Part shown: positions 13,580 to 25,864 of the stretch, piece after piece
Layout of the letters: each line of letters starts with the position of its first letter
How positions within the stretch are numbered: position 1 is the stretch's first letter
IMG/VR virus record: IMGVR_UViG_3300026484_000087
Coordinates: 124,001-188,000 of that record
Length of the DNA stretch: 64,000 nucleotides
Direction: 5' to 3' (one strand)
Program-made: the position numbers and the translations under genes
Notes under the pieces: generated by a model
The model's input: the letters and a program-made list of their open reading frames with translations, nothing else
Database searches by the model: none
What the model was told of the DNA's origin: nothing

Positions 13580-13939
13580 CTACTCTCCTTTTTCAATAGA
13601 CAAATTCTTTTTTGATTTTGTAGTAGGTCCCTTTTTAGAAAACATATATAAATTAGGTTTTGATCTTAGTGTTCTAATTTCACTTTTAGTATACCATACT
13701 GTATTGTAAAAATAACTCCAATTCATTTCTACCCACTTTATTTTCTTCTTAGTACTATAACCGCCTAATAAACCTTTCTTTTTACTTAGTTTAATTGGAA
13801 CTATCTTAGAGTCAATCTGATATAATGTTTTACCGTTTAGTAAACGTTTAAGATTCTTAAAAATTCTTTCATTTTCAGTTAAGACGGATGGTACTCTAAC
13901 TGCTGATCTATCTATCTCTGTTATAAGTATCTTAGACAT
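13580..13939 (-). CDS. hypothetical basic protein
   Basis: 119 aa; start overlaps the upstream stop codon. Confidence 0.65.
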   Translation of the reverse strand: MSKILITEIDRSAVRVPSVLTENERIFKNLKRLLNGKTLYQIDSKIVPIKLSKKKGLLGGYSTKKKIKWVEMNWSYFYNTVWYTKSEIRTLRSKPNLYMFSKKGPTTKSKKNLSIEKGE

Positions 13940-14481
13940 TACGAACTCAATCCATCATGACTATCATAAACTATATCTTTAAATTCTGGATCAGTTGCTA
14001 TCTGTACGTGTCGATCATCTTCAATCTGACATGGTTCTAATTCTATTTTAATCTTGCTATCAGAATTAATTTCATTATCCAATTTAAGAATGTCTAATTG
14101 TACAAGCAATGCTTCAGTATTCTTAACGTACGTTATGTCATCACCATGTATGAACATACTGGTGTTTTTAACATCATGACCTAATACAAAGATCTTCTTC
14201 AACTTACCTTGTCTTAATCTTGCAGTAGCATATCCTAATTCATAGAACATCCCAACGCCTCTAATGTCGTTATAGAACATAATAAATACATCACTATTAT
14301 CGATGGCTTCAATATCTTCCATAGCTTGTTTCTTACAAACTTCAGCATGTTCGCTAAATGGTTTACAGCCTAAATGTTTAGTCCAATCAATACTGCATTC
14401 ATGACCATTCTCTTCTAATGTTTCTTTCAAGACATGAAATACTGATGTGTCCTGAAACTTAGTTGCTAAATAAAACTTCAT
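13939..14481 (-). CDS. nucleoside 2-deoxyribosyltransferase-like protein
   Basis: KFYLA, DIEAIDNSDVFI and GMFYELGYA motifs. Confidence 0.75.
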   Translation of the reverse strand: MKFYLATKFQDTSVFHVLKETLEENGHECSIDWTKHLGCKPFSEHAEVCKKQAMEDIEAIDNSDVFIMFYNDIRGVGMFYELGYATARLRQGKLKKIFVLGHDVKNTSMFIHGDDITYVKNTEALLVQLDILKLDNEINSDSKIKIELEPCQIEDDRHVQIATDPEFKDIVYDSHDGLSS

Positions 14482-14575: not shown

Positions 14576-14742
14576 TTACCAACTTAATGTCTTTGTAACC
14601 ACATCAATAACTGTATTACTACATGAATATGTTAAGGTACCCTCTGGGGTTATATAGAAACTTCTTTTACCTAGAGCTTCATTTATTTCCTTTATAGATT
14701 CTTCTGTATATAAAACAGTATAACTACATTTATCTCCATCAA
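14576..14742 (-). CDS. virion RNAP beta'-like subunit, exon 2 (FDGDKCSYTVLY...KTLSW)
   Basis: Joining 15409 to 14742 gives GCA GAT T|TT GAT GGA GAT = ADFDGD; 55 codons in frame to TAA. Confidence 0.92.
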
Positions 14743-15408
14743 CGTTGCCTTCACATAGGTCGTTACTCTATGCAGTTCTCTTATGAACTTCCCCAGCTTC
14801 CACTGGGAGACGAGACTATATCATGTTCTTCTGACACCATATCAGTAAGAACCAAACCACTTCGATTTAAGCACTAGGTACGTGCACCCACTTGGGCCCT
14901 ACTCCCCGCTACAGGATAGTCGTTGAACATTACCCATATTATATATATATATATAGTAACTTAGGGTCTTAGCTGCTAAAGGGAACCTTAGGTTCCACGG
15001 TTGCCTATTATACTATTATAGTGCTGATATTTATAAACGTTTAGTTGGTTACTCTAAACTGAAATATCGAGGCTATATTAATATTGATCACTTAAGATCA
15101 TCCATACAAGATACATTATTATATCCCAGTAGTTTTGCAACTACTCTTGTTAAACCGTCATAGACTAGTTTCCTGTCTATTGTGGTGGTACAGCTTTAAG
15201 GTTTTCCAGCAATTCAATTTGTTATTCGACATGCTTCTCAGCATGAAGGATCAATTTATTTTTTAACTTAAATTTAACAACATCTTTTGGCCTTTTCTAT
15301 AAAGGCGTTAGTTTTTGTTGTTTTTATTTTAAATCCTATTAGTTTATATGTATAATTAATATATGTTTACTATCTATTTCATCCTAATAGTACCAGTAAA
15401 AAAAAATT
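14743..15408 (-). mobile_element. group I self-splicing intron (IA2-like), 666 nt, no intact ORF
   Basis: Exon ends in U and intron ends in G; P AATTGCTGGAAA (~15203-15214), Q TAGCAGCTAAG, R GTTCAACGACTA (14917-14928), S TGATATAGTC (14814-14823); P1 has a U-G pair at the splice site; P8 and P9 hairpins present. Confidence 0.93.
15274..15327 (-). pseudogene. probable relic of a homing-endonuclease gene in the intron P1 loop
   Basis: AGGA RBS, then ATA in place of ATG, then KTTKTNAFIEKAKRCC*. Confidence 0.4.
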
Positions 15409-16858
15409 AATCTGCTCCTAATCTATCCAGTTTTGAAAAATGGGGACTTAAGGAATTGAAATATGCCTCCGTTAATATAGGATACTCATATACTTTATCT
15501 TCTTCCTCCCAATCAAAACCAAGGATACTAACTGTTCTGGCTTTAACTGTCGTTTTAAGATAAGGTATGCTTGGATATATACCACCTAAACCAGCAACGG
15601 GGTATCTAGTTAAGAAACCAGGATATTTTTTAACATCTTTATATATTGCTAGATATATAAGCTCAGCATATGTTATTGGTCTAAGGTATCTTTTATCTAC
15701 ATCGTCTGGTATATCTAAAGTATTCTTTATAAGTTTTACTTTTTTACCATCATCATAGATAAGGGCAAGATAATAACCCTCAACTTCTATAGGTTCAGAT
15801 CTAAGTTCATCTTGTGCTAATTTATTTATAACACTATTAAGACCTTCATCAGATGTCCACATATCCTTAGTTTTTGGTTTTATATCAACGTTAACAGTTG
15901 TTAAGGTTTTCTTATCAACTAATCTGGCAGTATTGCTATGGATATCAAATACGTCACCAAGTATCTTTAAATTTAATTGGTACTTAGTTATAGGGTTAAT
16001 AGCCTTAGAATATTGGTATAAACCTATAACGGTATTATTAAAAGATATTCTATTCTCACTGTTAGTTAAATCATGTATTACCGATGGTATTGGCGTAATT
16101 ACATTTCTAGTAGAATCTCTTATTGCCCTTTTAGTCCATTTGTTCTGTATGAACTTTTTCTTTCCATCCATCAAAGATATAAAATGATCATATATTTCAG
16201 TTATGATAGTTTGTATTCTAAATCTTATAGGATCTAATATCGTAGCATCATTAGATGATGTAGATATATTCTCAAGAGCATTTGTTGTAGTTAGTAGCTT
16301 TCTATAGATAGCGTTAACTTCATCTTCACTTGGTTTACCTGCATCATCTACTATATAATCTCTCAAACCAGCTGGAAGTACTAAAAATCTATCTATTAAA
16401 ATATCTTGACTTTTATATTTCTTAATAAGTTTAATTTTAAATTCCCTAGCATCACTATTTCTAGTTTCTAATTTAAGTTTATCATATTTAGACATAAAGA
16501 ATTCAAAACCTGTTTCACCGTCATTAGCATTTGAGAGAACAAAATCAGAACTTTTACTATCCCACTTGGCAAAAGCTTTGCCTGACATAATGTCTGAGTA
16601 TAGTTTTTTTAAGCTAGCTATATGTTTATATATTAAAGGGTGTAATACTTTTATATGTAAATTTACATAACCGAATCTTTTATTTCTTTCTTCACTTCCA
16701 ACTCTACCAAATATTTCAGTAGAGAATAATCCATCTGGATTGAAGTTTTTACTAGATGATTCGAAGATGCTAAGATCTTTAACTTCACCTATCATTTTTA
16801 TTTGGTCTCTATTAAGTATTAATAAATCTATATTAAAAGGTTCCATTTTTTCTAACAT
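15409..16858 (-). CDS. virion RNAP beta'-like subunit (phiKZ gp180-like), exon 1; spliced product 538 aa
   Basis: PDGLFSTEIFG, VLPAGLRD, TRNVIT and TRYPV motifs; ORF stops at RLGAD inside the catalytic motif. Confidence 0.93.
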
Positions 16859-16933: not shown

Positions 16934-19900
16934 ATGGCTGATGATACAGAAATCGACTTAGATGACGATATAGGATTAGATGACGATGATATGGATTTCG
17001 GTTTCGAGGATCCTTTTTCTGAGCCCCCTCCTCCTAAGGATACTAGAGAAGCTGTTAGTAGAAGCATAAGTAAAGTTGGTAGTAGCTTCATGGATGAATT
17101 TACCGATGATAAAGTTGAAGTTGCTTCTGAAATGGTTAAAGCAAGTATTCCTAAAAGATTATCTACAGAAGCTAGCGGGTATGGATCAGTTGTAGACTCT
17201 TTTAAAAAGGATTTAAATACATCTGGTACAGAGATAAAGAATGCTGCTATACCTATGATAAAAGCAGTAGAATCATTTGTTCCAGAAGGAGGTCGTTTAG
17301 AATCGTTTATGAACCTAGCTAAAGAAAAGTTAGGTATGAATGAAGAAGAACGTACAAGTGAAGATATTGCAGCTGATGCAGCTGCTAGGGCTGCTGGTTC
17401 GGTAGCAGAAGTACTTGGAGAATTTCAGGATAAAGAAACGGCTAAGGATGCTATCAATTCCGTAATACAAAATAAGAAAGATCTTTCTAATATAGAACTA
17501 CAAGCTGGAATGGCCGGGCATCTTGAAGCAATGTCTAATTTTAACATAGATGTAACTAATGCATATTATAGAAAATCTTTAGAGTTACAATATAGACATT
17601 TATTTACTGCTAATGAGCAATTGGATATAACTAAACAAGGTTTTGAAACATTTAAGAACCAATTAGAATCTATTGTTGCTAATAGTGCTTTACCGGATTT
17701 AGTTAAAACTAAAAATTCTGAGTTTATGAAGCACAGACTATTAGAAAGAGCTGGAGAGAGTCTATTTGCTAGAACAGGGGTATTTGATAGTCTTAAAAAG
17801 AAATTAAGTGCTGAAGTACAAGGTGTAACTAGTATCATAGCTAATGGTATGACCGGTTTAGGTGATGCTGCAGATATGGTTAAATCTACTGCCGAAATGT
17901 CTGAGATGGCTGGGGGTAAAGAGGGCATGCTTGGTAGCCTTATGGCTGGTGGAGTTAAGGGCTTTGTTGGTAATAAGATAGGCGACATATTCGGTAAAAC
18001 TGCTATAGGCAAAAAAGGTATAGATTTAGTTAAAGATTTAACTATGGATATGTCCGGTACTTTTGACAATTTAGCAGAAAATAGAGAAGACGGATTGCTT
18101 AAGAATATATTTAGTGGTCTAAGTAGCTTTACATCTAATGAAGATGAAGAGCGTTCGTTTGGTATAAATAAAATAGATAGAGATGGAGTTGCATTATTTG
18201 ATGGTAAAGTACATACGTCTATAACTAAAATAATACCATCTTTATTATCTAAGATACTTAAAGAAGTAAGTTCTAGTAGATCAGGTAATGAGGAAGAAGA
18301 ACTTAGATTTGATTATGATACAGGTTCTTTTAAAACAAAATCAGATATATCTGATAACTTAACAACAAAGCTGGATAATAAGCTTTTGGATTCTGGTACA
18401 ACATTTAGTATCGATAGAATATTAAACGATATAGATAAAGAAATAAAACTTAATCTATCTGAAGAAGAATTAGCAGACATTAAAGAAAATATTTTAATGT
18501 ATACTATAAATGGTAAATCTTTAAATCCTAAAACTCTAGAGAAAAATGGTTTTTACGACGATCTTAATCCAGAGTTGGCAGATAAATTCAAAACAGCTAT
18601 AGATAAATACCTAAATGTTGAGGACGATAAATTAAGAGATACTAGGGTTAGTTTCCTTAATAAAGAATTAAATAACATTAAAACAAATGCTCCAAGTCCA
18701 CAAGATATACTTGAAAGCTATGATTCATCTGGAAGTATGGATGTTCTGGTAGATAAAGGCTTTGTTAAACTTGATGAGAAAACAGGTGACTATAAATTAG
18801 ATAAGGATAATTATAGAGAGTTACTTGGTAAGTCTGTTAGAAACATTAAGGATAAAGAAGAAGTAAAAGATAAAGAGTATAAATCTTTTGCTGAAAAGTT
18901 ACTAGCTGATAAAATGAAGAAAGCTGGAATATCTAAGGACGAAGAATCTGTTACAAATGAACCATCTAGTAATACAGGTAAGTTCTTTAAGGGTATTGCC
19001 ACAAGTGTAAAAGGGTTTAGTACAAATCTTGAACAAAATGCTATAGATCTAGTAGATGGCAAAAAAGATATAAGTGGTAAAATATCTGAATTAGGTAAGG
19101 GTACAAAAGAGTACATCACTGGCAAAAAAGATTTATCAAATCTTAGTTTTAGTACAGAAGCCAGCGATGACTTTAATCCATTAGCACCTATAAAAGTTAA
19201 GAGGTCTTTACTTACCGATTTTAAAACTGGTAAGGATTTTGTTAGTGGAATACATTCTATATCTGATGTTAAAAATATACTGGAATCTACTGATAAATAT
19301 AAAACAATAGAAAGTAAAATAAAAGCTGTTAAGAAATTGGCAGAAGAATCGGAAAATCCTAAAGAGTTTGTAGAATCTTTTAGGAAAACTGATGAATATA
19401 AAAAACTATCAACTAGCGGTAAAGCAGCGATAGATAAAGTTAGTGGTACTATAAGTACTGTTGGAAAAGCCATTAAGGAAGATGTAGAAAATACAAAAAC
19501 TTTTAAAACAGCTGAAACGGCAGTTACTAGAGGTAAGAAATTAGCATCTGATGTTGTTAATAGTAAGCCAATTAAAAAGATAACTGAATCTAAGATAGTT
19601 ACAAATGCTATTGAAGACTTAGATGGAATAAAAACTAAAGTTACTAATTTAGCTAATCTATCAGATATGTCTACAGTTGTAGAAGAGTTATGGGTAAAAG
19701 TTGAAAGTAAAATAGAAGAGCTAGAAGCATTAGATAAAAATGATGTTATAAATAAAAGAATAGAAGCTCTTAGAAATTTATCTTCAGATATAGAAAAATT
19801 TGAAGTAGATGAAAATAATATAAATGAAAGTAGAAAAACAGTATTAGGTTTTATAAGTACTTTAAGTAAATTACTATCAACAGCTATTGCCACGGATGTT

Positions 19901-22900
19901 AAAGATACTATAGTTAGTAAAGTATCTCCTATTAGTAAGAAGATAAGTCATGTTACTAATAAGTATACATTTAAGAAACCTACAATCGATGAAAAAGATA
20001 CTAATGCGGAAGAAGTTAGTAAGAAAGTAGAAAAGAAAACTACTAAACAAACTTATAAACCAAAACCGAGTAGAAAATATATTAAGAAAGAAGCAGGTGA
20101 AGTAATACCTGGTAAACCTACTATTATAGCTGGTAAGGCTTCTAGTTATAAATCTGCAGTAGTTCCTGATAGAAAACCTACATTTGATTTCAGCGATAAC
20201 AATGCTAAACAGGCTATAATTGATAAATTGAAGTTTACTAAAGGTGGACAGTATAAGTTCAGTTCTTCAGCGGATGTAGAGCAATTAAAAGATATACTTA
20301 AGTTACCGGCTATACCTGTTAAAATAGTTAGATTGTTATTAGATTTTAATTTTATAGGAACAATAGGTTCTGATAGCACAATGCCAGCATCATTTAGTGC
20401 AGCATTCGTAAAAGAGGTACCTGGTCTAAAAGATGACTATCTATTCTTAATAACTAAACAAACTTTAGATATGGCAGAGGCTAATCCAGAAGTACTTATA
20501 GAAATGATATCTCATGAACATGAGCATTTGGTTCAAACTACTGATGGTAGATTAAGATTTCCTCAACAGGATGAAAGTATAGCTGGTCACTACTACAGTG
20601 AAATAGATTTTGATAAAGATAAATTCAAAACAGCTACACATTTAATACCGTTTAAACATTACTTAGATTCTCCATGGGAAACAGAAGCATATAGAGAAGG
20701 TTACTCTAATGTATATGATTACTATATAGAGAATGGTATAATACCTGAAAAGACGACTAGAGAAGAGTTTATAAAACAAGCTCAAGACACTAACTTCAAA
20801 CAGATAAGAGACCAGAACAAAGTAATACTTAAACAATATGAGGATTTATTTAAACAGAATAATGCTCCATGGTATTATGATAAAGAAGGAGATATCGATT
20901 ATGATAAAATACCTTCTTTAAAAGCTATGCAAGAAACGCCTACAAGTTTCACATACGAAAGTCCAAATGGGCCAGATGACGGTGTAGTAGATGTTAATGC
21001 GGAACAGATTGATATTGGAGGCGATCCAAAAGTTGCTGCCGGTATAAAAACTGATAGAAAAGAAACCTTAAAAGATAAGCTATCTAGACAAAAAGATAAA
21101 CTTGTAAATACTGGAAAAGATATAAGTAAAAAGGTTACTGCTAATAAAACAGTAGATAAACTATTACATAAAAATAAAGATCTTACTAAGATGTCTTTTA
21201 GTACTGAAGATAATAGCTTTAATAAGTTAGCTCCGGTTAAAAGAGAAAATAGAATAGATAGTTTTATACAAAGTACTAAGGATACTGTTAAGGATACAAA
21301 GGATACTGTTGTAAACAGTAAACTATATAAAGACAGCATTGAAAAAATAAAATATATAGAAACATTCTTATCTAATAAAGTAGATAAAATAGTAACTCCA
21401 GATATTAAGAGAACAGTTATAGATAAAATAGATTCTTATGTTCTTGATAAAATGACAGCTCTTGGTAAGATAGATACTGATGATAAACGTAAAACATATG
21501 ATGGATTACAGAGTGCTAGGGATAAACTAAAAGCTATAGATGTAAATAAAAATACAACTAAGGATTTTATAAATAGTACAAAATCGGTATATTCAGATAT
21601 AAATAAATTTGGTCCGAATGAATTTAAAGAACTGGTATCTGATATAAAAACTAAATCTATAGATAAGCTTACTGAATTTAAAGGTAGGGTTGAAGATAAC
21701 GTTGCTATAAACAATATAAAAGATGATGTTATTGAAAGAGCTACTGACGTTAAAGAGTTTGTAGACAATAATGAAACAGTTAAAAACATAAAAAACTCTG
21801 TTAGTAATGTTGTTAAAGTTAATGATATAAAAGATAGTAAAGCTGGTAAGTTAATTAAAAAACATATTCCTAAAAGTTTTACTGATAGTATAGCCAACAT
21901 TAAATCTACTGTATTTGATGCTCCTAAGGATGAGAGAGTACATGAGTTCGATGTTAATGAAGAAGATAAAACTGAACAACAGGAACTAAAAGATATTCTG
22001 TTTAAGATAACTGATAGTTCTGATTCAGATAGTCTTAGATTAAATCTAAAAATATATTTGGAAAAAGTAAATAAAGAGATAGATAAAGTAAGTGACTTCA
22101 TTTCTAAAGATAAAGAAAGAGAACTTAAGTTTAGAGGAAGAGTAGATAAGTTAAAGAACATTAGTGAAAAACTATTTAATATAGACATTAATGAAAGTTC
22201 TACTATAAAAGATCTATCTAAAGAACTTAATGAGGGATTAGGTACTCTTATATCTGACGTTACGCCATCTAAGTTTAAAACTAGTAGCGGTCCAACGAAA
22301 GAAGAAGAGGATAAAGCTAAAGAAGAAAGTAAAGAAGATTCATTATTAGATATACTTGATTCTGATAATCCTATAGATGCATTACAAAGTAAAATTAAGA
22401 ATGCCGTTAAGTCTAAAATAAAAGGCTTATTAAAATCTGGAGTTAAAGGTGCTTTTAACTTAGGTAAAGGTATTATTCAGAGAGATATTGAACGTGGTAA
22501 AAAACTTAGAGCGTTCCTTAAAAAGAAACTATTTGATAAAAAGGATGGTTCACCTGGATTTGTTAAAACTAAACTAAATAAAGGTTTAAACTTTGCTGGT
22601 AAGGTTTTAAGAAAAGGTAAAGATCTAGCATCTGATATAAATGATAAAAGCATAAATGTAGTTAAAGCTGATATCAGAAATGGTGAACGTCTTAGAGGCA
22701 TGCTCTTTAAAAGTAAATCTAAAGATAATGAAACAAAACATGAAGAAGCTAAAACTACAGTAGAACCTATTGTCAAGATATCTAGTGCTACAAAAGATGA
22801 AAAAGTAAAAGAGATATCCGATAATGCTAAGGGTACAGTCAAAAAGAAAAAACCTATTAAATCTAAGAAATCTCATAAACAAAAAAGAGGAATAATAGAT

Positions 22901-25864
22901 CCTTCTACTATTATATATACTAGAGGAGAACATGGACAACGTGTACTTAAGAAAACTAGTATAGCTGGAAGTTCTAATAAACTTAGTACTAGTGCTGACA
23001 GAGATGGTGATGGTAGACGTGATGGTTCTTGGTTGGATAAGGTCTCTAAAACAAAAGATGATAAGGTAAAAGCATCTAAGAAAACAAAACAAGTAAAAGG
23101 TATATCTGGTAGTGCCAATGTAGTTAAATCTGCTTTCGATAGAGATGGTAGCGGTAGACGTGATGGTTCTTGGTTGGATAGACTTAAAAAGAAAAAAGAT
23201 ACTGCGATAAATAGTGGAAAGAACATATTAGCTAAGGCTAAAGAAAAAGGTTTTTCATGGTTGCCTATGTTAATTGGTGCTTTTGGTTTCTTAAAACCAT
23301 TGTTGGGCAAATTAATTGGTGGCGTAAGTAGTTTAGGTAAATTTATAGTAAATGGTGTTGGAAGTGCTTTTAAATCTGTTGGTAGTTTCTTATTAAATGG
23401 AATTAAAGGAATCTTCGGATCATTGGGTAAAATGTTATCTGGTCCATTAGAGGCTGTTAAGGGTTTTGTTTCTAATGGTATAGACAAAGCCAAGGCTGTT
23501 GCTGGAAAAGCTCTTGATGCTGCTAAGAATGCCGGTAGTAAGGTATTAGAAGTAGCTAAGAATTCTAAAGCTGGCAAAATTGTTGCTAACGTTGCAAGTA
23601 AGGCAAAAAATGCCATTGTATCAGGTGGATCTAAATTATTAAACGGAGTTAAGAATTCTAAGGTGGGTGGTGTAGTTGCTAAAGTAGCTAAGAAGATACC
23701 TACTGATGGAATACTTAAACTTCTTAAATCTTTTAAAGGTTTAATATTTAAGAAACTAGGTAAAAAAGCAGGGGCCACAGTTGCTGCTAAATTGGCTGGT
23801 AAAGTTGCATCTAGAATTGTTCCATTTGCCGGAGCAGCATTACTTGCTTATGATGCTGCTAAAATAGGTTATGATGTCTTCCATAATGGTACTAGTCTTA
23901 AGAGTGCCATATCTAAACAGATTCTTGGATTTGATTTATTTAGTAAAGACGATGTACCTAAAGATGAGGATGGTAATCCTATAAAACCAGATGAGCAAAC
24001 CTCGGAAGCTTCTAAAGGTAAAAAAGATAATTCAGCTAAAGTAGAAGCAGTTGTTAAAAAGAAAGTTAAACAAGCTGGATTCATAGATGTTGACGGTAAG
24101 AAAGTAAGGGTTTCTACTAAACAAATGGCTATGATAAAGGATTTAATGGATAAGGGTGAAAGTCAAAAAGCCTTAATGTTATTAAATACTTTAAAAGAAC
24201 AACAATATAAAGATAAAGATAATGATGCTAAAAATAAAGCGTTAGAAGAAGAGAATAATAAAATAGACGAATTTAATTCTAAGATAGATGAAAATAAAAC
24301 ACAATCTAAAAAAGTAATCAAAAAGAAAAGTAAAAAACTTAATAAAGTTATTTCTATTCTTAATGGCGATAAAAAGAAAATAAGCAAGAAAATAGATAAA
24401 GTATTTGAAGATAAGAATATTAATATAAAAGAAAAAAGAAAAAGAATAAGTAAATTAACGTATATAATAAACAGCATAAATACGATAATTCATGAATTAA
24501 AAAATAGTTACGATATAAATGATCCTGAGGATATTGAAGAACTTGTTAGTTTATATGGTAAAGGCTATAAATATGCTTTAAGTAAATCATTATTAGATAC
24601 TCTTAATGGCATAGATAAAAATACAAAAGATATAAATACAAAGGTAAAAAGTAAATATTTAAAAGATCTTAAAGAAGATAAGGATAACAATATAGAAAAA
24701 CCTAAGGAAGAAAAAGGTTTACTTAGTAGAGCTGCAGATAGCATAAAGAATTTCTTTGGATTTAGTAGTAAGAGAGAAGAACCTACTACAATGACCCCTA
24801 GTATTAATAGTGCCAGTACAAACAGTGGCGGTAAGATAGCAAAACTTAAACCTATGACCGCTACTGATAGTGATCTTATCTCGGACCTTAAACGTGATGA
24901 GGGAGTTGTATTACATACATATAAAGATCATCTAGGTTATAAAACCATAGGCACAGGACATCTTACTGATGAACGTAAAGGAGGCATTCCATTACGTAAA
25001 ATAATTGGTGAAGATAAAGATAATATCACTATGGATGAAAATGATACTATATTGAAATATGATATAGATAGAACATCTAAAGAGGTAGAATCTAAAATAC
25101 CATGGTTAAAGAAAAAACCAGAACCGGTTAAAAAATCTATTATTAACATGGCGTTTAACTTAGGTACTAATGGATTACTTAAATTCAAAAATACTTTAAA
25201 ACATGTTAAGAATGATGAGTACAATGAGGCTGCTCATGGCATGCTTAATAGTAAATGGGCAAGACAAGTTGGTAATCGTGCTACAAGAATAGCTAGTACC
25301 GTTGCTTCTGTAGATTATGCTACAGCAAAACAACATGATAATAAAGTTACTGAAAAGCCTTCTGTATTTAATACAGATAAAGCTATAAGTAATAGTAGAA
25401 AAGTTGTTCCAGTAGCTAATAATGTTACCTATAAACCAAGACCTAAAACTGAAGTTAAATCAGTTGCTAAAGTTGAAAGTGTAGCAGCTCCTGTTAGTAC
25501 TACAAATACTAGTATAGGTAAAACTATAACTAAGAATACTACCAAAATAAAAGATCCAGCTAAAACTTTAGCGGTTGAAAGTAATAAAAAACTATCTGCT
25601 GTTGGAGAAGTTAGCGATAAATCATTAAGCGAATTAAAAACACTTAATAAGACAATGACTGATTCTCTAGATATACAGAGACAAACATTAGAAGCAATGA
25701 CTCAAATGTTAAATTTGAATCACGACATGCATAATAGAAGTTTAAGTATGGATAAAGATATAGTGGATGTAGAGGTATCTAAAACAAAAAAAATAGCTCC
25801 TCCGCAAATGCAATCTATGCCTAAACCAGCTATGGGACTTGAAAAAAGAAGTTTCGCAAGTTAA
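16934..25864 (+). CDS. giant tail-associated protein (phiKZ gp181-like) with C-terminal T4-type lysozyme and internal HExxH domain
   Basis: 2976 aa, divergent from the RNAP gene; YYRKSLELQY, N.ALPDLVK and ITKIIPSLL motifs; two DRDG.GRRDGSWLD repeats; DEG...YKD.LG..TIG lysozyme motif. Confidence 0.88.
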   Translation: MADDTEIDLDDDIGLDDDDMDFGFEDPFSEPPPPKDTREAVSRSISKVGSSFMDEFTDDKVEVASEMVKASIPKRLSTEASGYGSVVDSFKKDLNTSGTEIKNAAIPMIKAVESFVPEGGRLESFMNLAKEKLGMNEEERTSEDIAADAAARAAGSVAEVLGEFQDKETAKDAINSVIQNKKDLSNIELQAGMAGHLEAMSNFNIDVTNAYYRKSLELQYRHLFTANEQLDITKQGFETFKNQLESIVANSALPDLVKTKNSEFMKHRLLERAGESLFARTGVFDSLKKKLSAEVQGVTSIIANGMTGLGDAADMVKSTAEMSEMAGGKEGMLGSLMAGGVKGFVGNKIGDIFGKTAIGKKGIDLVKDLTMDMSGTFDNLAENREDGLLKNIFSGLSSFTSNEDEERSFGINKIDRDGVALFDGKVHTSITKIIPSLLSKILKEVSSSRSGNEEEELRFDYDTGSFKTKSDISDNLTTKLDNKLLDSGTTFSIDRILNDIDKEIKLNLSEEELADIKENILMYTINGKSLNPKTLEKNGFYDDLNPELADKFKTAIDKYLNVEDDKLRDTRVSFLNKELNNIKTNAPSPQDILESYDSSGSMDVLVDKGFVKLDEKTGDYKLDKDNYRELLGKSVRNIKDKEEVKDKEYKSFAEKLLADKMKKAGISKDEESVTNEPSSNTGKFFKGIATSVKGFSTNLEQNAIDLVDGKKDISGKISELGKGTKEYITGKKDLSNLSFSTEASDDFNPLAPIKVKRSLLTDFKTGKDFVSGIHSISDVKNILESTDKYKTIESKIKAVKKLAEESENPKEFVESFRKTDEYKKLSTSGKAAIDKVSGTISTVGKAIKEDVENTKTFKTAETAVTRGKKLASDVVNSKPIKKITESKIVTNAIEDLDGIKTKVTNLANLSDMSTVVEELWVKVESKIEELEALDKNDVINKRIEALRNLSSDIEKFEVDENNINESRKTVLGFISTLSKLLSTAIATDVKDTIVSKVSPISKKISHVTNKYTFKKPTIDEKDTNAEEVSKKVEKKTTKQTYKPKPSRKYIKKEAGEVIPGKPTIIAGKASSYKSAVVPDRKPTFDFSDNNAKQAIIDKLKFTKGGQYKFSSSADVEQLKDILKLPAIPVKIVRLLLDFNFIGTIGSDSTMPASFSAAFVKEVPGLKDDYLFLITKQTLDMAEANPEVLIEMISHEHEHLVQTTDGRLRFPQQDESIAGHYYSEIDFDKDKFKTATHLIPFKHYLDSPWETEAYREGYSNVYDYYIENGIIPEKTTREEFIKQAQDTNFKQIRDQNKVILKQYEDLFKQNNAPWYYDKEGDIDYDKIPSLKAMQETPTSFTYESPNGPDDGVVDVNAEQIDIGGDPKVAAGIKTDRKETLKDKLSRQKDKLVNTGKDISKKVTANKTVDKLLHKNKDLTKMSFSTEDNSFNKLAPVKRENRIDSFIQSTKDTVKDTKDTVVNSKLYKDSIEKIKYIETFLSNKVDKIVTPDIKRTVIDKIDSYVLDKMTALGKIDTDDKRKTYDGLQSARDKLKAIDVNKNTTKDFINSTKSVYSDINKFGPNEFKELVSDIKTKSIDKLTEFKGRVEDNVAINNIKDDVIERATDVKEFVDNNETVKNIKNSVSNVVKVNDIKDSKAGKLIKKHIPKSFTDSIANIKSTVFDAPKDERVHEFDVNEEDKTEQQELKDILFKITDSSDSDSLRLNLKIYLEKVNKEIDKVSDFISKDKERELKFRGRVDKLKNISEKLFNIDINESSTIKDLSKELNEGLGTLISDVTPSKFKTSSGPTKEEEDKAKEESKEDSLLDILDSDNPIDALQSKIKNAVKSKIKGLLKSGVKGAFNLGKGIIQRDIERGKKLRAFLKKKLFDKKDGSPGFVKTKLNKGLNFAGKVLRKGKDLASDINDKSINVVKADIRNGERLRGMLFKSKSKDNETKHEEAKTTVEPIVKISSATKDEKVKEISDNAKGTVKKKKPIKSKKSHKQKRGIIDPSTIIYTRGEHGQRVLKKTSIAGSSNKLSTSADRDGDGRRDGSWLDKVSKTKDDKVKASKKTKQVKGISGSANVVKSAFDRDGSGRRDGSWLDRLKKKKDTAINSGKNILAKAKEKGFSWLPMLIGAFGFLKPLLGKLIGGVSSLGKFIVNGVGSAFKSVGSFLLNGIKGIFGSLGKMLSGPLEAVKGFVSNGIDKAKAVAGKALDAAKNAGSKVLEVAKNSKAGKIVANVASKAKNAIVSGGSKLLNGVKNSKVGGVVAKVAKKIPTDGILKLLKSFKGLIFKKLGKKAGATVAAKLAGKVASRIVPFAGAALLAYDAAKIGYDVFHNGTSLKSAISKQILGFDLFSKDDVPKDEDGNPIKPDEQTSEASKGKKDNSAKVEAVVKKKVKQAGFIDVDGKKVRVSTKQMAMIKDLMDKGESQKALMLLNTLKEQQYKDKDNDAKNKALEEENNKIDEFNSKIDENKTQSKKVIKKKSKKLNKVISILNGDKKKISKKIDKVFEDKNINIKEKRKRISKLTYIINSINTIIHELKNSYDINDPEDIEELVSLYGKGYKYALSKSLLDTLNGIDKNTKDINTKVKSKYLKDLKEDKDNNIEKPKEEKGLLSRAADSIKNFFGFSSKREEPTTMTPSINSASTNSGGKIAKLKPMTATDSDLISDLKRDEGVVLHTYKDHLGYKTIGTGHLTDERKGGIPLRKIIGEDKDNITMDENDTILKYDIDRTSKEVESKIPWLKKKPEPVKKSIINMAFNLGTNGLLKFKNTLKHVKNDEYNEAAHGMLNSKWARQVGNRATRIASTVASVDYATAKQHDNKVTEKPSVFNTDKAISNSRKVVPVANNVTYKPRPKTEVKSVAKVESVAAPVSTTNTSIGKTITKNTTKIKDPAKTLAVESNKKLSAVGEVSDKSLSELKTLNKTMTDSLDIQRQTLEAMTQMLNLNHDMHNRSLSMDKDIVDVEVSKTKKIAPPQMQSMPKPAMGLEKRSFAS
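22997..23180 (+). repeat. two intragenic DRDG(D/S)GRRDGSWLD repeats
   Basis: GGTAGACGTGATGGTTCTTGGTTGGATA occurs twice, 141 bp apart. Confidence 0.85.

What the first reader, a model, noticed from the sequence alone, without database searches (positions are those of the whole stretch)
14576..16858. Group I intron splits the DFDGD active site of the virion RNAP
Seen: the ORF ends at RLGAD*, but removing 14743-15408 restores ADFDGD and adds 55 residues (538 aa). The U/G boundaries, the P, Q, R and S elements and a P1 helix (exon GAUU with intron GAUC near 15249-15252) are all present. Established: group I introns occur in RNAP genes of phiKZ-like and AR9 phages. Inference: splicing is essential to make an active enzyme and could time its production.
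Basis: partly seen in the sequence, partly recalled or inferred. Interest (0 to 1): 0.75.

Follow-up and report, generated by a model that had tools for sequence, protein, structure and literature searches.

The report
Group I intron in phage RNA polymerase
A 666-base self-splicing (group I) intron that has lost its homing-endonuclease gene interrupts the catalytic DFDGD motif of a giant phage's virion RNA polymerase gene, as is already known for phage phiKZ and its relatives.

Summary
On the minus strand, an ORF (16858..15407) ends RLGAD plus stop. Removing 15408..14743 (666 nt) joins it in frame to 14742..14576, giving a 538-aa protein that reads ADFDGDK.

- **Gene identity.** The two pieces map end to end on PHROG 2986, at profile positions 3-484 and 486-537. 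The protein is a phiKZ gp180-type virion RNAP beta' N-terminal subunit: 38% identity, and the same divergent neighbour, a giant lysozyme protein.
- **Group I intron.** Rfam RF00028 matches over the full model at 34 bits, E 1e-6, below the 50-bit cutoff. The 5' exon ends in U, paired with G in a 9-bp P1, and the intron ends in G. P2-P9.2 are supported by many compensatory changes.
- **Boundaries.** A related vent-metagenome contig lacks exactly these 666 nt and reads GAC TTC GAT.
- **Endonuclease lost.** Relatives carry a roughly 1.3-1.4 kb homing-endonuclease gene in the P1 loop. Here only its start (ATG now ATA) and C-terminal remnant remain.
- **Recurrence.** phiKZ has a group I intron one nucleotide upstream. 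59 of the 120 closest homologues are broken within the motif, at five or more insertion points.

This is a new member of a known kind.

The parts
15409..16858 (-). Exon 1 of the vRNAP beta' N-terminal subunit gene (gp180-like). It encodes residues 1-483 plus the first base of the Phe codon, and as an ORF it ends at the TAA 15409-15407.
   Evidence: ORF list. PHROG 2986, E 1.3e-166, profile positions 3-484 of 539. 38% identity to phiKZ gp180, E 2.9e-113, with no hit to the non-virion gp55.
14743..15408 (-). Group I intron, 666 nt, with no ORF. It begins AAUUU... and ends ...GGCAACG, the last G being the omega G (14743).
   Evidence: Rfam RF00028, 34 bits, E 1e-6, full model. Model R1 covariation. 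An intron-less allele lacks exactly these bases. No minus-strand ORF of 40 aa or more lies inside.
15404..15412 (-). P1 5' strand: exon GAUU plus intron AAUUU. The 5' splice site lies after U15409, and an in-frame UAA spans the site.
   Evidence: Sequence. Paired with 15249-15257 in the MFE and centroid folds. Relative L102 shows a compensatory change: exon GACU with guide GGUC.
15249..15257 (-). Internal guide sequence (P1 3' strand, AAAUUGAUC). G15252 forms the U-G wobble with U15409.
   Evidence: (Rfam places its P1 3' strand here).
15258..15403 (-). P1 loop (146 nt, AT-rich) holding the scar of a deleted homing-endonuclease gene. Bases 15404-15312 are homologous to the start of the relative's intron, including the ORF start (ATG there, ATA at 15327-15325 here). 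About 1.36 kb is missing.
   Evidence: Alignments with L006. A metagenome contig carries 1288 extra letters here.
15225..15344 (-). Degenerate remnant of the endonuclease C-terminus (residues 445-482 of the L006 protein, 74% identity, 4 stops). It overlaps the guide sequence and P2.
   Evidence: the genome search in the window's own record.
15230..15245 (-). P2 hairpin with a GAGA tetraloop.
   Evidence: In L102 the stem sequence is entirely different while the GAGA loop is kept.
15215..15221 (-). P3 5' strand (CAAAUUG), pairing with 14853-14859. This is the pseudoknot that closes the core.
   Evidence: Rfam alignment. L102 has UAUUUU with GGAAUA: three double compensatory changes, read by eye.
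15003..15210 (-). P4 5' strand (15205-15210, pairing with 14975-14980), P5 (15199-15202 with 15003-15006) and a roughly 200-nt multi-hairpin P5 extension that includes a GAAA-tetraloop hairpin (15160-15180).
   Evidence: RNAalifold on window, L006 and L102. The exact P5 pairing is uncertain: Rfam's version is not supported by L102.
14926..14998 (-). Hairpin 14981-14998, P4 3' strand (14975-14980), and P6/P6a/P6b with a (TA)n loop at about 14941-14957.
   Evidence: The loop length varies in relatives.
14814..14921 (-). P7 (14917-14921 with 14814-14818) enclosing P7.1, P7.2-type hairpins (14871-14916), the P3 3' strand (14853-14859) and P8 (14825-14852).
   Evidence: Model R1 and covariation over 60 distinct phage introns: 94% of cells paired, score 0.47 against 0.117 for shuffles. 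P8 shows U-A changing to C-G in L006.
14753..14810 (-). P9 (GGAA tetraloop), P9.1 and P9.2.
   Evidence: Compensatory changes in L006 and L102. Metagenome variants at 14792/14807 and 14794/14805 always change together.
14576..14742 (-). Exon 2: the last two bases of the Phe codon, then DGDK... to the stop at 14578-14576 (55 residues counting Phe).
   Evidence: PHROG 2986, profile positions 486-537 of 539, E 1.6e-9. Colinear with the uninterrupted Bacillus phage AgentSmith gp80.
16934..25864 (+). Context: a divergently transcribed 2976-aa protein with a phage lysozyme domain. It is the positional counterpart of phiKZ gp181.
   Evidence: The same arrangement is seen in L099-L102 and AgentSmith.

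Best explanation
The gene for the N-terminal half of the beta' subunit of a phiKZ-type virion RNA polymerase is interrupted by a 666-nt group I intron of the IA type, which has extra hairpins between P7 and P3. The intron sits after the first base of the Phe codon of the Mg-binding motif NADFDGD.

How it most likely works (inferred):
- The pre-mRNA folds into the ribozyme.
- The guide sequence at 15257-15249 pairs with the exon end GAUU and the first five intron bases.
- An external guanosine attacks after U15409.
- The freed exon end then attacks after G14743.
- The exons are ligated to give GAU-UUU-GAU, and the mRNA encodes a 538-aa subunit with an intact DFDGD.

Unspliced RNA can only give a 483-aa product, which stops at the UAA that spans the splice site and holds one of the three catalytic Asp residues.

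The intron is a decayed mobile element. Its relatives carry a zinc-ribbon (DUF723) plus DUF559-like nuclease homing-endonuclease gene in the P1 loop. Here that gene has been deleted, leaving its start and C-terminal remnant. Intron-less and endonuclease-carrying alleles coexist in hydrothermal-vent phage populations.

Shown: the anatomy, the boundaries, the homology and the polymorphism. Inferred: that the RNA actually splices, and that the enzyme is packaged in virions.
For: - **Reading frame.** Removal of the 666 nt restores the frame exactly, and the two pieces are contiguous on PHROG 2986.
- **Rfam.** RF00028 matches over the full model, E 1e-6, and is the only hit in the 206-kb record.
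- **Splice-site features.** U-G wobble, omega G and a 9-bp P1, which free folding also finds.
- **Compensatory changes.** Seen in P1, P2, P3, P8, P9, P9.1 and P9.2 against L006 and L102. RNAalifold finds 39 of 143 pairs with double changes. The P7-P9 model covaries over 60 introns.
- **Natural alleles.** A contig in run X3 joins 15411 to 14740 with 4 letters between, a net loss of 666 nt, and reads ADFDGD. A contig in run X2 has 1288 extra letters in the P1 loop.
- **Endonuclease.** L006 carries a 482-aa endonuclease ORF at the same place. Remnants of it lie in the window.
- **phiKZ.** gp180 also ends LGAD and is followed by the HNH protein gp179, then a group I core scoring 92 bits, then an FDGD exon.
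- **Uninterrupted homologues.** 238 of 278 phage records are uninterrupted across the motif.
- **Sequence conservation.** The intron core is 92% identical between the window and L006, against 74-76% for the exons.
Against: - No spliced RNA was seen. The one metatranscriptome that holds related sequence has a contig crossing the 3' splice site unspliced, and it may contain DNA.
- The Rfam score is below the curated cutoff (34 against 50 bits), because of the 146-nt P1 loop and the roughly 200-nt P5 insertion.
- No convincing P10 pairing with the 3' exon can be drawn.
- The P5 pairing is uncertain.
- For the analogous phiKZ intron, a long-read transcriptome study reported no spliced reads (PMC10914365).
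- Virion packaging is inferred only from homology and gene order.
Confidence: 0.9

Rival explanations
1. The insertion is a dead intron relic that no longer splices. The gene would then be a pseudogene, or the phage would make a truncated, inactive subunit.
For: The endonuclease gene has decayed. The Rfam score is sub-threshold. No spliced RNA was seen. The record is an uncultivated metagenome assembly.
Against: All core helices are intact, and they are kept by compensatory changes in relatives at 52-79% host-protein identity. The core is far more conserved than the exons. Both exons keep open frames and a strong profile match. vRNAP is needed to start infection in phiKZ-type phages (established knowledge, e.g. 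PMC10612078).
Confidence: 0.05
2. The gene is truly split into two separately translated polypeptides that assemble without RNA splicing, as the jumbo-phage beta and beta' subunits are already split elsewhere.
For: Jumbo-phage RNAP subunits are naturally split (PMC7598289). Annotators routinely call the first piece as a complete protein (phiKZ gp180).
Against: In frame, exon 2 has no ATG, GTG or TTG between the upstream TAG (14770-14768) and FDGD. The break falls inside a five-residue catalytic loop. 238 of 278 phage homologues and 61 of 120 metagenomic homologue clusters are continuous. The spacer is a ribozyme, not a spacer with translation signals.
Confidence: 0.02
3. The intron has been kept because splicing regulates when or how much vRNAP subunit is made.
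For: There is no evidence from this sequence. In general, T4 intron splicing depends on translation and growth state (Sandegren and Sjoberg 2007, cited in PMC10914365). A stop codon sits exactly at the 5' splice site in all four introns examined at the first-Asp sites, namely the window, L006, phiKZ and Yong XC31.
Against: Closely related phages do without the intron, as do about half of all relatives. The insertion point varies by lineage. This pattern fits selfish mobile elements better than a conserved regulatory device.
Confidence: 0.1

Closest known systems
phiKZ gp180/gp179 group I intron (virion RNAP beta' N-terminal subunit gene)
   Same: - Same host gene family, with the same neighbour (gp181-type lysozyme protein).
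- Same motif: the annotated gp180 also ends LGAD and stop, with an FDGD... exon downstream.
- A group I core lies just before exon 2 (Rfam 92 bits).
- The endonuclease ORF lies between the 5' splice site and the core.
- An in-frame stop sits at the splice site.
- The 3' half shows detectable nucleotide similarity (nhmmer E 3.8e-8; R1 53.6 bits).
   Different: - Its insertion point is 1 nt upstream, between the Asp and Phe codons.
- It carries an HNH endonuclease, whereas this lineage's relatives carry a DUF723 zinc-ribbon plus DUF559-like nuclease.
- The window's copy has no endonuclease at all.
- The window's intron has a roughly 200-nt P5 extension.
Endonuclease-carrying sister introns in uncultivated relatives (L006 = IMGVR_UViG_3300026484_000105; L102)
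   Same: Identical insertion point and phase. The core is 92-94% identical in L006 and clearly homologous in L102. The peripheral helices are the same.
   Different: They keep a 421-482-aa homing-endonuclease ORF in the P1 loop. L102 has a shorter P5 extension and a 5-bp P10 that the window lacks.
PhiPA3 gp210 intron in the vRNAP beta subunit gene (Birkholz et al. 2024, PMC11620839)
   Same: A mobile group I intron sitting next to catalytic Asp residues of a jumbo-phage virion RNAP gene. It illustrates what such elements can do in phage-phage competition.
   Different: It is in a different subunit (beta, the gp178 homologue), it has an active HNH nicking endonuclease, and it has been studied experimentally. 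No competition role can be claimed for the endonuclease-less copy here.
Intron in the non-virion RNAP beta' gene of Vibrio phage vB_pir03
   Same: The break is at NAD|FDGD of the paralogous polymerase. The last 75 or so nt of the intron (P9.1-P9.2 to the 3' splice site) are about 90% identical to the window's.
   Different: The host gene is the paralogue (gp55-like). The exon ends in C rather than U. The rest of the intron is not alignable by blastn.

Membership tests
Group I intron (Rfam RF00028) | Conserved catalytic core: P3-P8 with the P4 (P/Q) and P7 (R/S) pairings | tested here: met
   Full-length alignment to RF00028 at E 1e-6, though at 34 bits it is below the 50-bit gathering score. 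The P7 sequence GACUA/UAGUC matches 57-60 of 60 distinct family members at each position.
Group I intron (Rfam RF00028) | 5' exon ends in U, paired with G of an internal guide sequence (P1) | tested here: met
   U15409 pairs with G15252 inside a 9-bp helix. L102 shows a compensatory exon and guide change.
Group I intron (Rfam RF00028) | Intron ends in G (omega G), and excision restores the host reading frame | tested here: met
   The last intron base is G14743. The 538-aa product is colinear with uninterrupted homologues. The intron-less allele differs by exactly 666 nt.
Group I intron (Rfam RF00028) | Helices maintained by covariation | tested here: met
   94% of cells paired, covariation score 0.47 against 0.117 for shuffles and 0.084 or less for slid partners. 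That alignment was fitted to the model. Independent MAFFT plus RNAalifold gives 39 of 143 pairs with double changes.
Group I intron (Rfam RF00028) | Guanosine-dependent self-splicing | not testable with these tools
   The only RNA run with related sequence shows no spliced contig.
Subgroup IA group I introns | Extra hairpins (P7.1/P7.2) between P7 and the P3 3' strand | tested here: met
   Hairpins at 14903-14916, 14886-14897 and 14871-14885, with covariation. A finer assignment (IA1, IA2 or IA3) was not tested.
Mobile group I intron with homing endonuclease | An intact endonuclease ORF inside the intron | tested here: not met
   No ORF of 40 aa or more on the intron strand. Only remnants remain, and there is no other copy in the 206-kb record. 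Relatives L006 and L102 and the X2 contig do carry it.
phiKZ-type virion RNAP beta' N-terminal subunit (gp180 family, PHROG 2986) | Sequence homology, including the NADFDGD Mg-binding loop | tested here: met
   PHROG 2986 E 1.3e-166. phiKZ gp180 38% identity, no hit to gp55. The motif is present only after the intron is removed.
phiKZ-type virion RNAP beta' N-terminal subunit (gp180 family, PHROG 2986) | Conserved position next to the giant tail-associated lysozyme gene | tested here: met
   Window 16934-25864 (lysozyme domain) compared with phiKZ gp181, and the same arrangement in five relatives.
phiKZ-type virion RNAP beta' N-terminal subunit (gp180 family, PHROG 2986) | Protein is packaged in the virion | not testable with these tools
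   Known for phiKZ Gp180 (PMC10612078). Inferred here.
Group II intron | Domain V/VI RNA and, usually, a reverse-transcriptase ORF | tested here: not met
   No Rfam group II match even at E up to 10 in the region, and no ORF.
Intein | In-frame protein insertion without stop codons | tested here: not met
   A stop codon lies at the first intron codon, with many stops in all frames.

The most novel reading that the evidence does not exclude
The 15 nucleotides that encode D-F-D-G-D in jumbo-phage RNAP beta' genes may be an unusually dense battleground for mobile group I introns.

- At least five distinct insertion points occur, all with U at -1 and G at omega.
- About half of the 120 closest vRNAP homologue clusters are occupied.
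- At least two unrelated endonuclease families are involved: HNH, and DUF723 with a DUF559-like nuclease.
- Related intron modules occur in both the virion and the non-virion paralogue, and in phages from vents, Vibrio and Pseudomonas.
- All stages of the homing cycle coexist in one vent population: empty site, endonuclease-plus, endonuclease-deleted.

If so, these elements could act as weapons or barriers between co-infecting jumbo phages, as shown for PhiPA3 gp210. The endonuclease-less copy here would be a protected, 'immune' allele.
Probability: 0.35. Interest if true: 0.5.

Novelty: new member of a known kind. Interest (0 to 1): 0.3.

Why it matters
For annotation, the true product is a 538-aa catalytic subunit, not the 483-aa ORF that gene callers report. 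phiKZ gp180 itself, and about half of the metagenomic homologues, are annotated truncated in the same way.

For biology, it adds a clean natural example of the homing cycle in an uncultivated hydrothermal-vent jumbo phage: an empty site, an endonuclease-carrying intron and an endonuclease-deleted intron in one population. It also shows that the Mg-binding loop of jumbo-phage RNA polymerases is a recurrent intron target.

It does not change what is known about group I introns or about these polymerases.

Tried and rejected
- **Default Rfam scan of the window:** nothing at gathering score. The hit appears only with the E-value threshold.
- **Megablast of the locus against GenBank phages:** no match. 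The phage has no close cultivated relative.
- **PDB sequence searches** with exon 1 and with the L006 endonuclease: nothing useful.
- **RNA evidence:** only one metatranscriptome held related words. It gave an unspliced contig over the 3' splice site and no junction.
- **P5 pairing:** my first version, taken from the Rfam alignment (15197-15203 with 14984-14990), was dropped because L102 does not keep it. L102 instead supports a local hairpin at 14981-14998 and a short P5 at 15199-15202 with 15003-15006.
- **P10:** no convincing pairing in the window, although L102 has one.
- **Co-conversion tract:** I looked for exon flanks more similar than the rest between the window and L006. None was found.
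- **Other explanations considered and rejected:** group II intron, intein, translational bypass (666 nt is far too long), and assembly error (the same structure appears in independent assemblies L006, X1 and X2).
- **Ceyssens 2014 (PMC4178840):** could not be read, as it is not held.
Full report
**Observation.** The gene lies on the minus strand. The ORF 16858..15407 (483 aa) ends ...SKLDRLGAD with a TAA at 15409-15407. Joining 16858..15409 to 14742..14576 gives 1617 nt, which is 538 codons plus a stop, reading ...RLGAD-FDGDKCSY...TLSW. Only this junction gives Phe. U15409 supplies the first base of the codon and U14742-U14741 the other two.

**What the gene is.**
- Exon 1 matches PHROG 2986 ('RNA polymerase beta subunit') at E 1.3e-166 over profile positions 3-484 of 539. 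The 54 residues of exon 2 match positions 486-537 at E 1.6e-9. The two pieces are therefore adjacent parts of one protein, with one residue (the split Phe) between them.
- Pfam gives only a weak Rpb1 domain 1 hit.
- tblastn finds 314 phage records, all jumbo phages of the phiKZ type, at 40% identity or less.
- The spliced product aligns to phiKZ gp180 (38%, E 2.9e-113). It also aligns end to end with the uninterrupted 542-aa protein of Bacillus phage AgentSmith (39.8%, residues 7-538), which reads RLGADFDGDT. There is no hit to the non-virion paralogue gp55.
- phiKZ gp180 is annotated as a structural head protein and lies divergently next to gp181, the giant tail-associated endolysin. The window has the same arrangement, with a 2976-aa protein carrying a lysozyme domain at 16934-25864. 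So do all relatives examined.
- 'Virion RNAP beta' N-terminal subunit' is thus well supported by homology and gene order. Packaging itself is inferred.

**Evidence that the insert is a group I intron.**
- A default Rfam scan finds nothing. With an E-value threshold, RF00028 aligns over its whole length to 15274..14791 at 34 bits, E 1e-6. It is the only hit in the 206-kb virus record that holds the window.
- The low score is explained by two large insertions: 146 nt in the P1 loop and about 200 nt in P5.
- P1 is exon GAUU plus intron AAUUU (15412-15404) pairing with AAAUUGAUC (15257-15249), with the U15409-G15252 wobble. An unconstrained fold of the 678-nt RNA finds the same long-range helix in both the MFE and the centroid structure (z -4.5).
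- A 79%-identical homologue from another virus record (L006) has the same break (LLGAD plus stop) and an intron core that MAFFT aligns at 94% mean column identity, or 92% over the ungapped core columns. The few differences are compensatory: P8 U-A to C-G, two P9 pairs C-G to U-A with the GNRA loop kept, and five pairs of P9.2.
- A more distant host (L102, 52% protein identity) carries the same intron lineage at the same nucleotide. It gives many more double changes: P2 is entirely different with the same GAGA loop; P3 is CAAAUU/GGUUUG against UAUUUU/GGAAUA; and P1 is exon GAUU with guide GAUC against exon GACU with guide GGUC. RNAalifold on the three sequences predicts 143 pairs, 39 of them with double changes.
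- A covariance model of P7-P9 built from the window and L006 finds 62 matches among phage loci that were fetched with a loose R...S pattern. On that alignment 94% of cells pair and the covariation score is 0.47, against 0.117 for shuffles and 0.084 or less for slid partners. That alignment is fitted to the model, so it leans towards the structure.
- The hairpins between P7 and the P3 3' strand place the intron in subgroup IA.

**Independent check of the boundaries.** Logan contigs of hydrothermal-vent metagenomes were laid on the locus.
- In run X3, an 817-nt contig at the same depth as its 14-kb neighbour contig joins 15411 to 14740 with four letters between. On the coding strand it reads GCA GAC TTC GAT GGA GAT. 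This is an intron-less allele that is about 96% identical in exon 1, lacks exactly 666 nt net, and has synonymous differences at the insertion site.
- In run X2, a 10.9-kb contig has 1288 extra letters replacing 15295-15425. This is an endonuclease-carrying version.
- Variant contigs change 14792 together with 14807, and 14794 together with 14805. Those are the two sides of two P9 pairs.
- The single RNA run (X6) gives a 255-nt contig that runs unspliced across the 3' splice site, and no junction. Splicing in vivo is therefore not shown.

**State of the intron.**
- In L006 a 482-aa ORF lies between the 5' splice site and the guide sequence. It has repeated DUF723 zinc-ribbon modules and a weak DUF559-type nuclease match, and it matches endonuclease PHROGs 559, 681 and 9084. 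L102 has a homologue at 36% identity.
- The window keeps the first 93 or so nt of that region, including the ORF start (ATG in L006, ATA at 15327-15325 here). It lacks about 1.36 kb. It keeps the last 38 or so codons, now with four stops, where they overlap the guide sequence and P2.
- No other copy of the endonuclease is in the record, and no other intron of this family.
- Exons are 74-76% identical between the window and L006, against 92% for the intron core, with no visible co-conversion tract. This fits lateral spread of the intron, strong constraint on it, or both. That reading is inference.

**Comparison with what is known.**
- phiKZ gp180 as annotated also ends ...APLGAD plus stop. The HNH protein gp179 follows, then a group I core (Rfam 92.2 bits), then an unannotated exon FDGDTVSF....
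- Its junction must be GAU|UUC, which is 1 nt upstream of the window's. Vibrio phage Yong XC31 is like phiKZ.
- The literature already lists gp179 as a predicted intron endonuclease, and lists introns in the phiKZ RNAP subunit genes gp55 and gp180 (PMC10914365, PMC11512511). It states that mature Gp180 contains DFDGD (PMC10612078).
- One long-read study saw no spliced phiKZ reads (PMC10914365).
- AR9 and Staphylococcus jumbo phages have intron-split RNAP genes (bioRxiv 10.1101/2020.12.14.422802). PhiPA3 has a studied intron endonuclease in the beta subunit gene (PMC11620839).

**How common the interruption is.**
- Among GenBank phages, 238 of 278 records are continuous across the motif.
- Among the 120 closest protein clusters from metagenomes (45-99% identity), 59 stop or diverge within the motif: 29 after the first Asp, 2 after DF, 3 after DFD, 15 after DFDG and 10 after DFDGD. 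The other 61 are continuous.
- DNA was checked for four of them. L099 is broken after the third Asp codon (HNH ORF, Rfam 82 bits). L100 is broken after the Gly codon (HNH ORF; no Rfam hit at E up to 0.01, but 66.7 bits with my model). L101 is broken after the second Asp codon (no ORF, 70.8 bits). L102 has the same site as the window. Every one has U before the 5' site and G before the 3' site.
- The non-virion beta' gene of Vibrio phage vB_pir03 is split at NAD|FDGD by an intron whose last 75 or so nt are about 90% identical to the window's.
- The motif is therefore a recurrent target of several intron lineages.

**Verdict.** The feature is a new member of a known kind. The timing idea has no support. 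The closest relatives that lack the intron, and the varying insertion points, fit selfish mobile elements better than a regulatory device. Interest is modest; the hotspot pattern is the most reusable by-product.

Noticed in passing
window 16934-25864 (+): A 2976-aa Lys/Glu-rich protein with a T4-type phage lysozyme domain at residues 2654-2781. It is the positional counterpart of phiKZ gp181 (tail-associated endolysin). Relatives have VanY, SLT or Peptidase_S74 domains instead, so the lytic domain appears to be swapped between lineages.
   Followed up: partly
window 14941-14957 (minus strand, P6b loop): A (TA)n run in an intron loop. Its length is polymorphic: 7 nt shorter in L006, with single-base 'left out' calls in contigs from runs X1 and X2.
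   Followed up: partly
window 15135-15266 (+): A 43-aa plus-strand ORF antisense to the intron is also 'conserved' in L006 (6933-7064). This is a by-product of the conserved ribozyme sequence, not a gene.
   Followed up: yes
window 13939-14481 (-): The gene just downstream of exon 2 has a sub-threshold match to nucleoside 2-deoxyribosyltransferase (PF05014, 27.2 bits against a cutoff of 28.8).
   Followed up: no
L009, L010, L056, L072 (all IMGVR_UViG_3300025000_000053, 250 kb): One uncultivated jumbo-phage contig carries at least six introns related to the window's (R1 scores 37-73 bits). It is a heavily intron-laden genome.
   Followed up: no
L104 (Vibrio phage vB_pir03, MT811961.1 80416-83265): The non-virion RNAP beta' gene (gp55-like) is annotated as two CDS split at NAD|FDGD. 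The intron's 3' end is about 90% identical to the window's. The exon appears to end in C rather than the usual U.
   Followed up: partly
proteins P0022, P0029, P0050, P0055, P0066, P0088, P0089, P0098, P0105: Nine homologue clusters are full-length beta' N subunits of 684-710 aa with a C-terminal extension fused in frame. In seven of the nine the extension carries an HNH_3 domain. This suggests endonuclease genes abutting or fused to the end of the target gene.
   Followed up: no
run X6 (biofilm metatranscriptome), contig of 1549 nt at depth 93: A highly covered RNA contig matches only the P9 region (14770-14822). It is probably another member of this intron family, expressed in that sample.
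   Followed up: no
L004 14343-14160 (phiKZ NC_004629, about 186160-186343, minus strand): The second exon of phiKZ gp180 (FDGDTVSF...GEPKQRD) is not annotated in the RefSeq record. The gp180 CDS stops at LGAD.
   Followed up: yes
HQ630627.1 116680-116846 (PhiPA3, under 'gp133 putative endonuclease'): Two blastn pieces at 84% identity match parts of the window's P4/P5-extension and P6-P7 region. This is another related intron in PhiPA3, at a different locus.
   Followed up: no
window 1-64000: There are no tRNA genes in the window. Background GC is about 26-34%, rising to 43% over the ribozyme core (14700-15000).
   Followed up: yes
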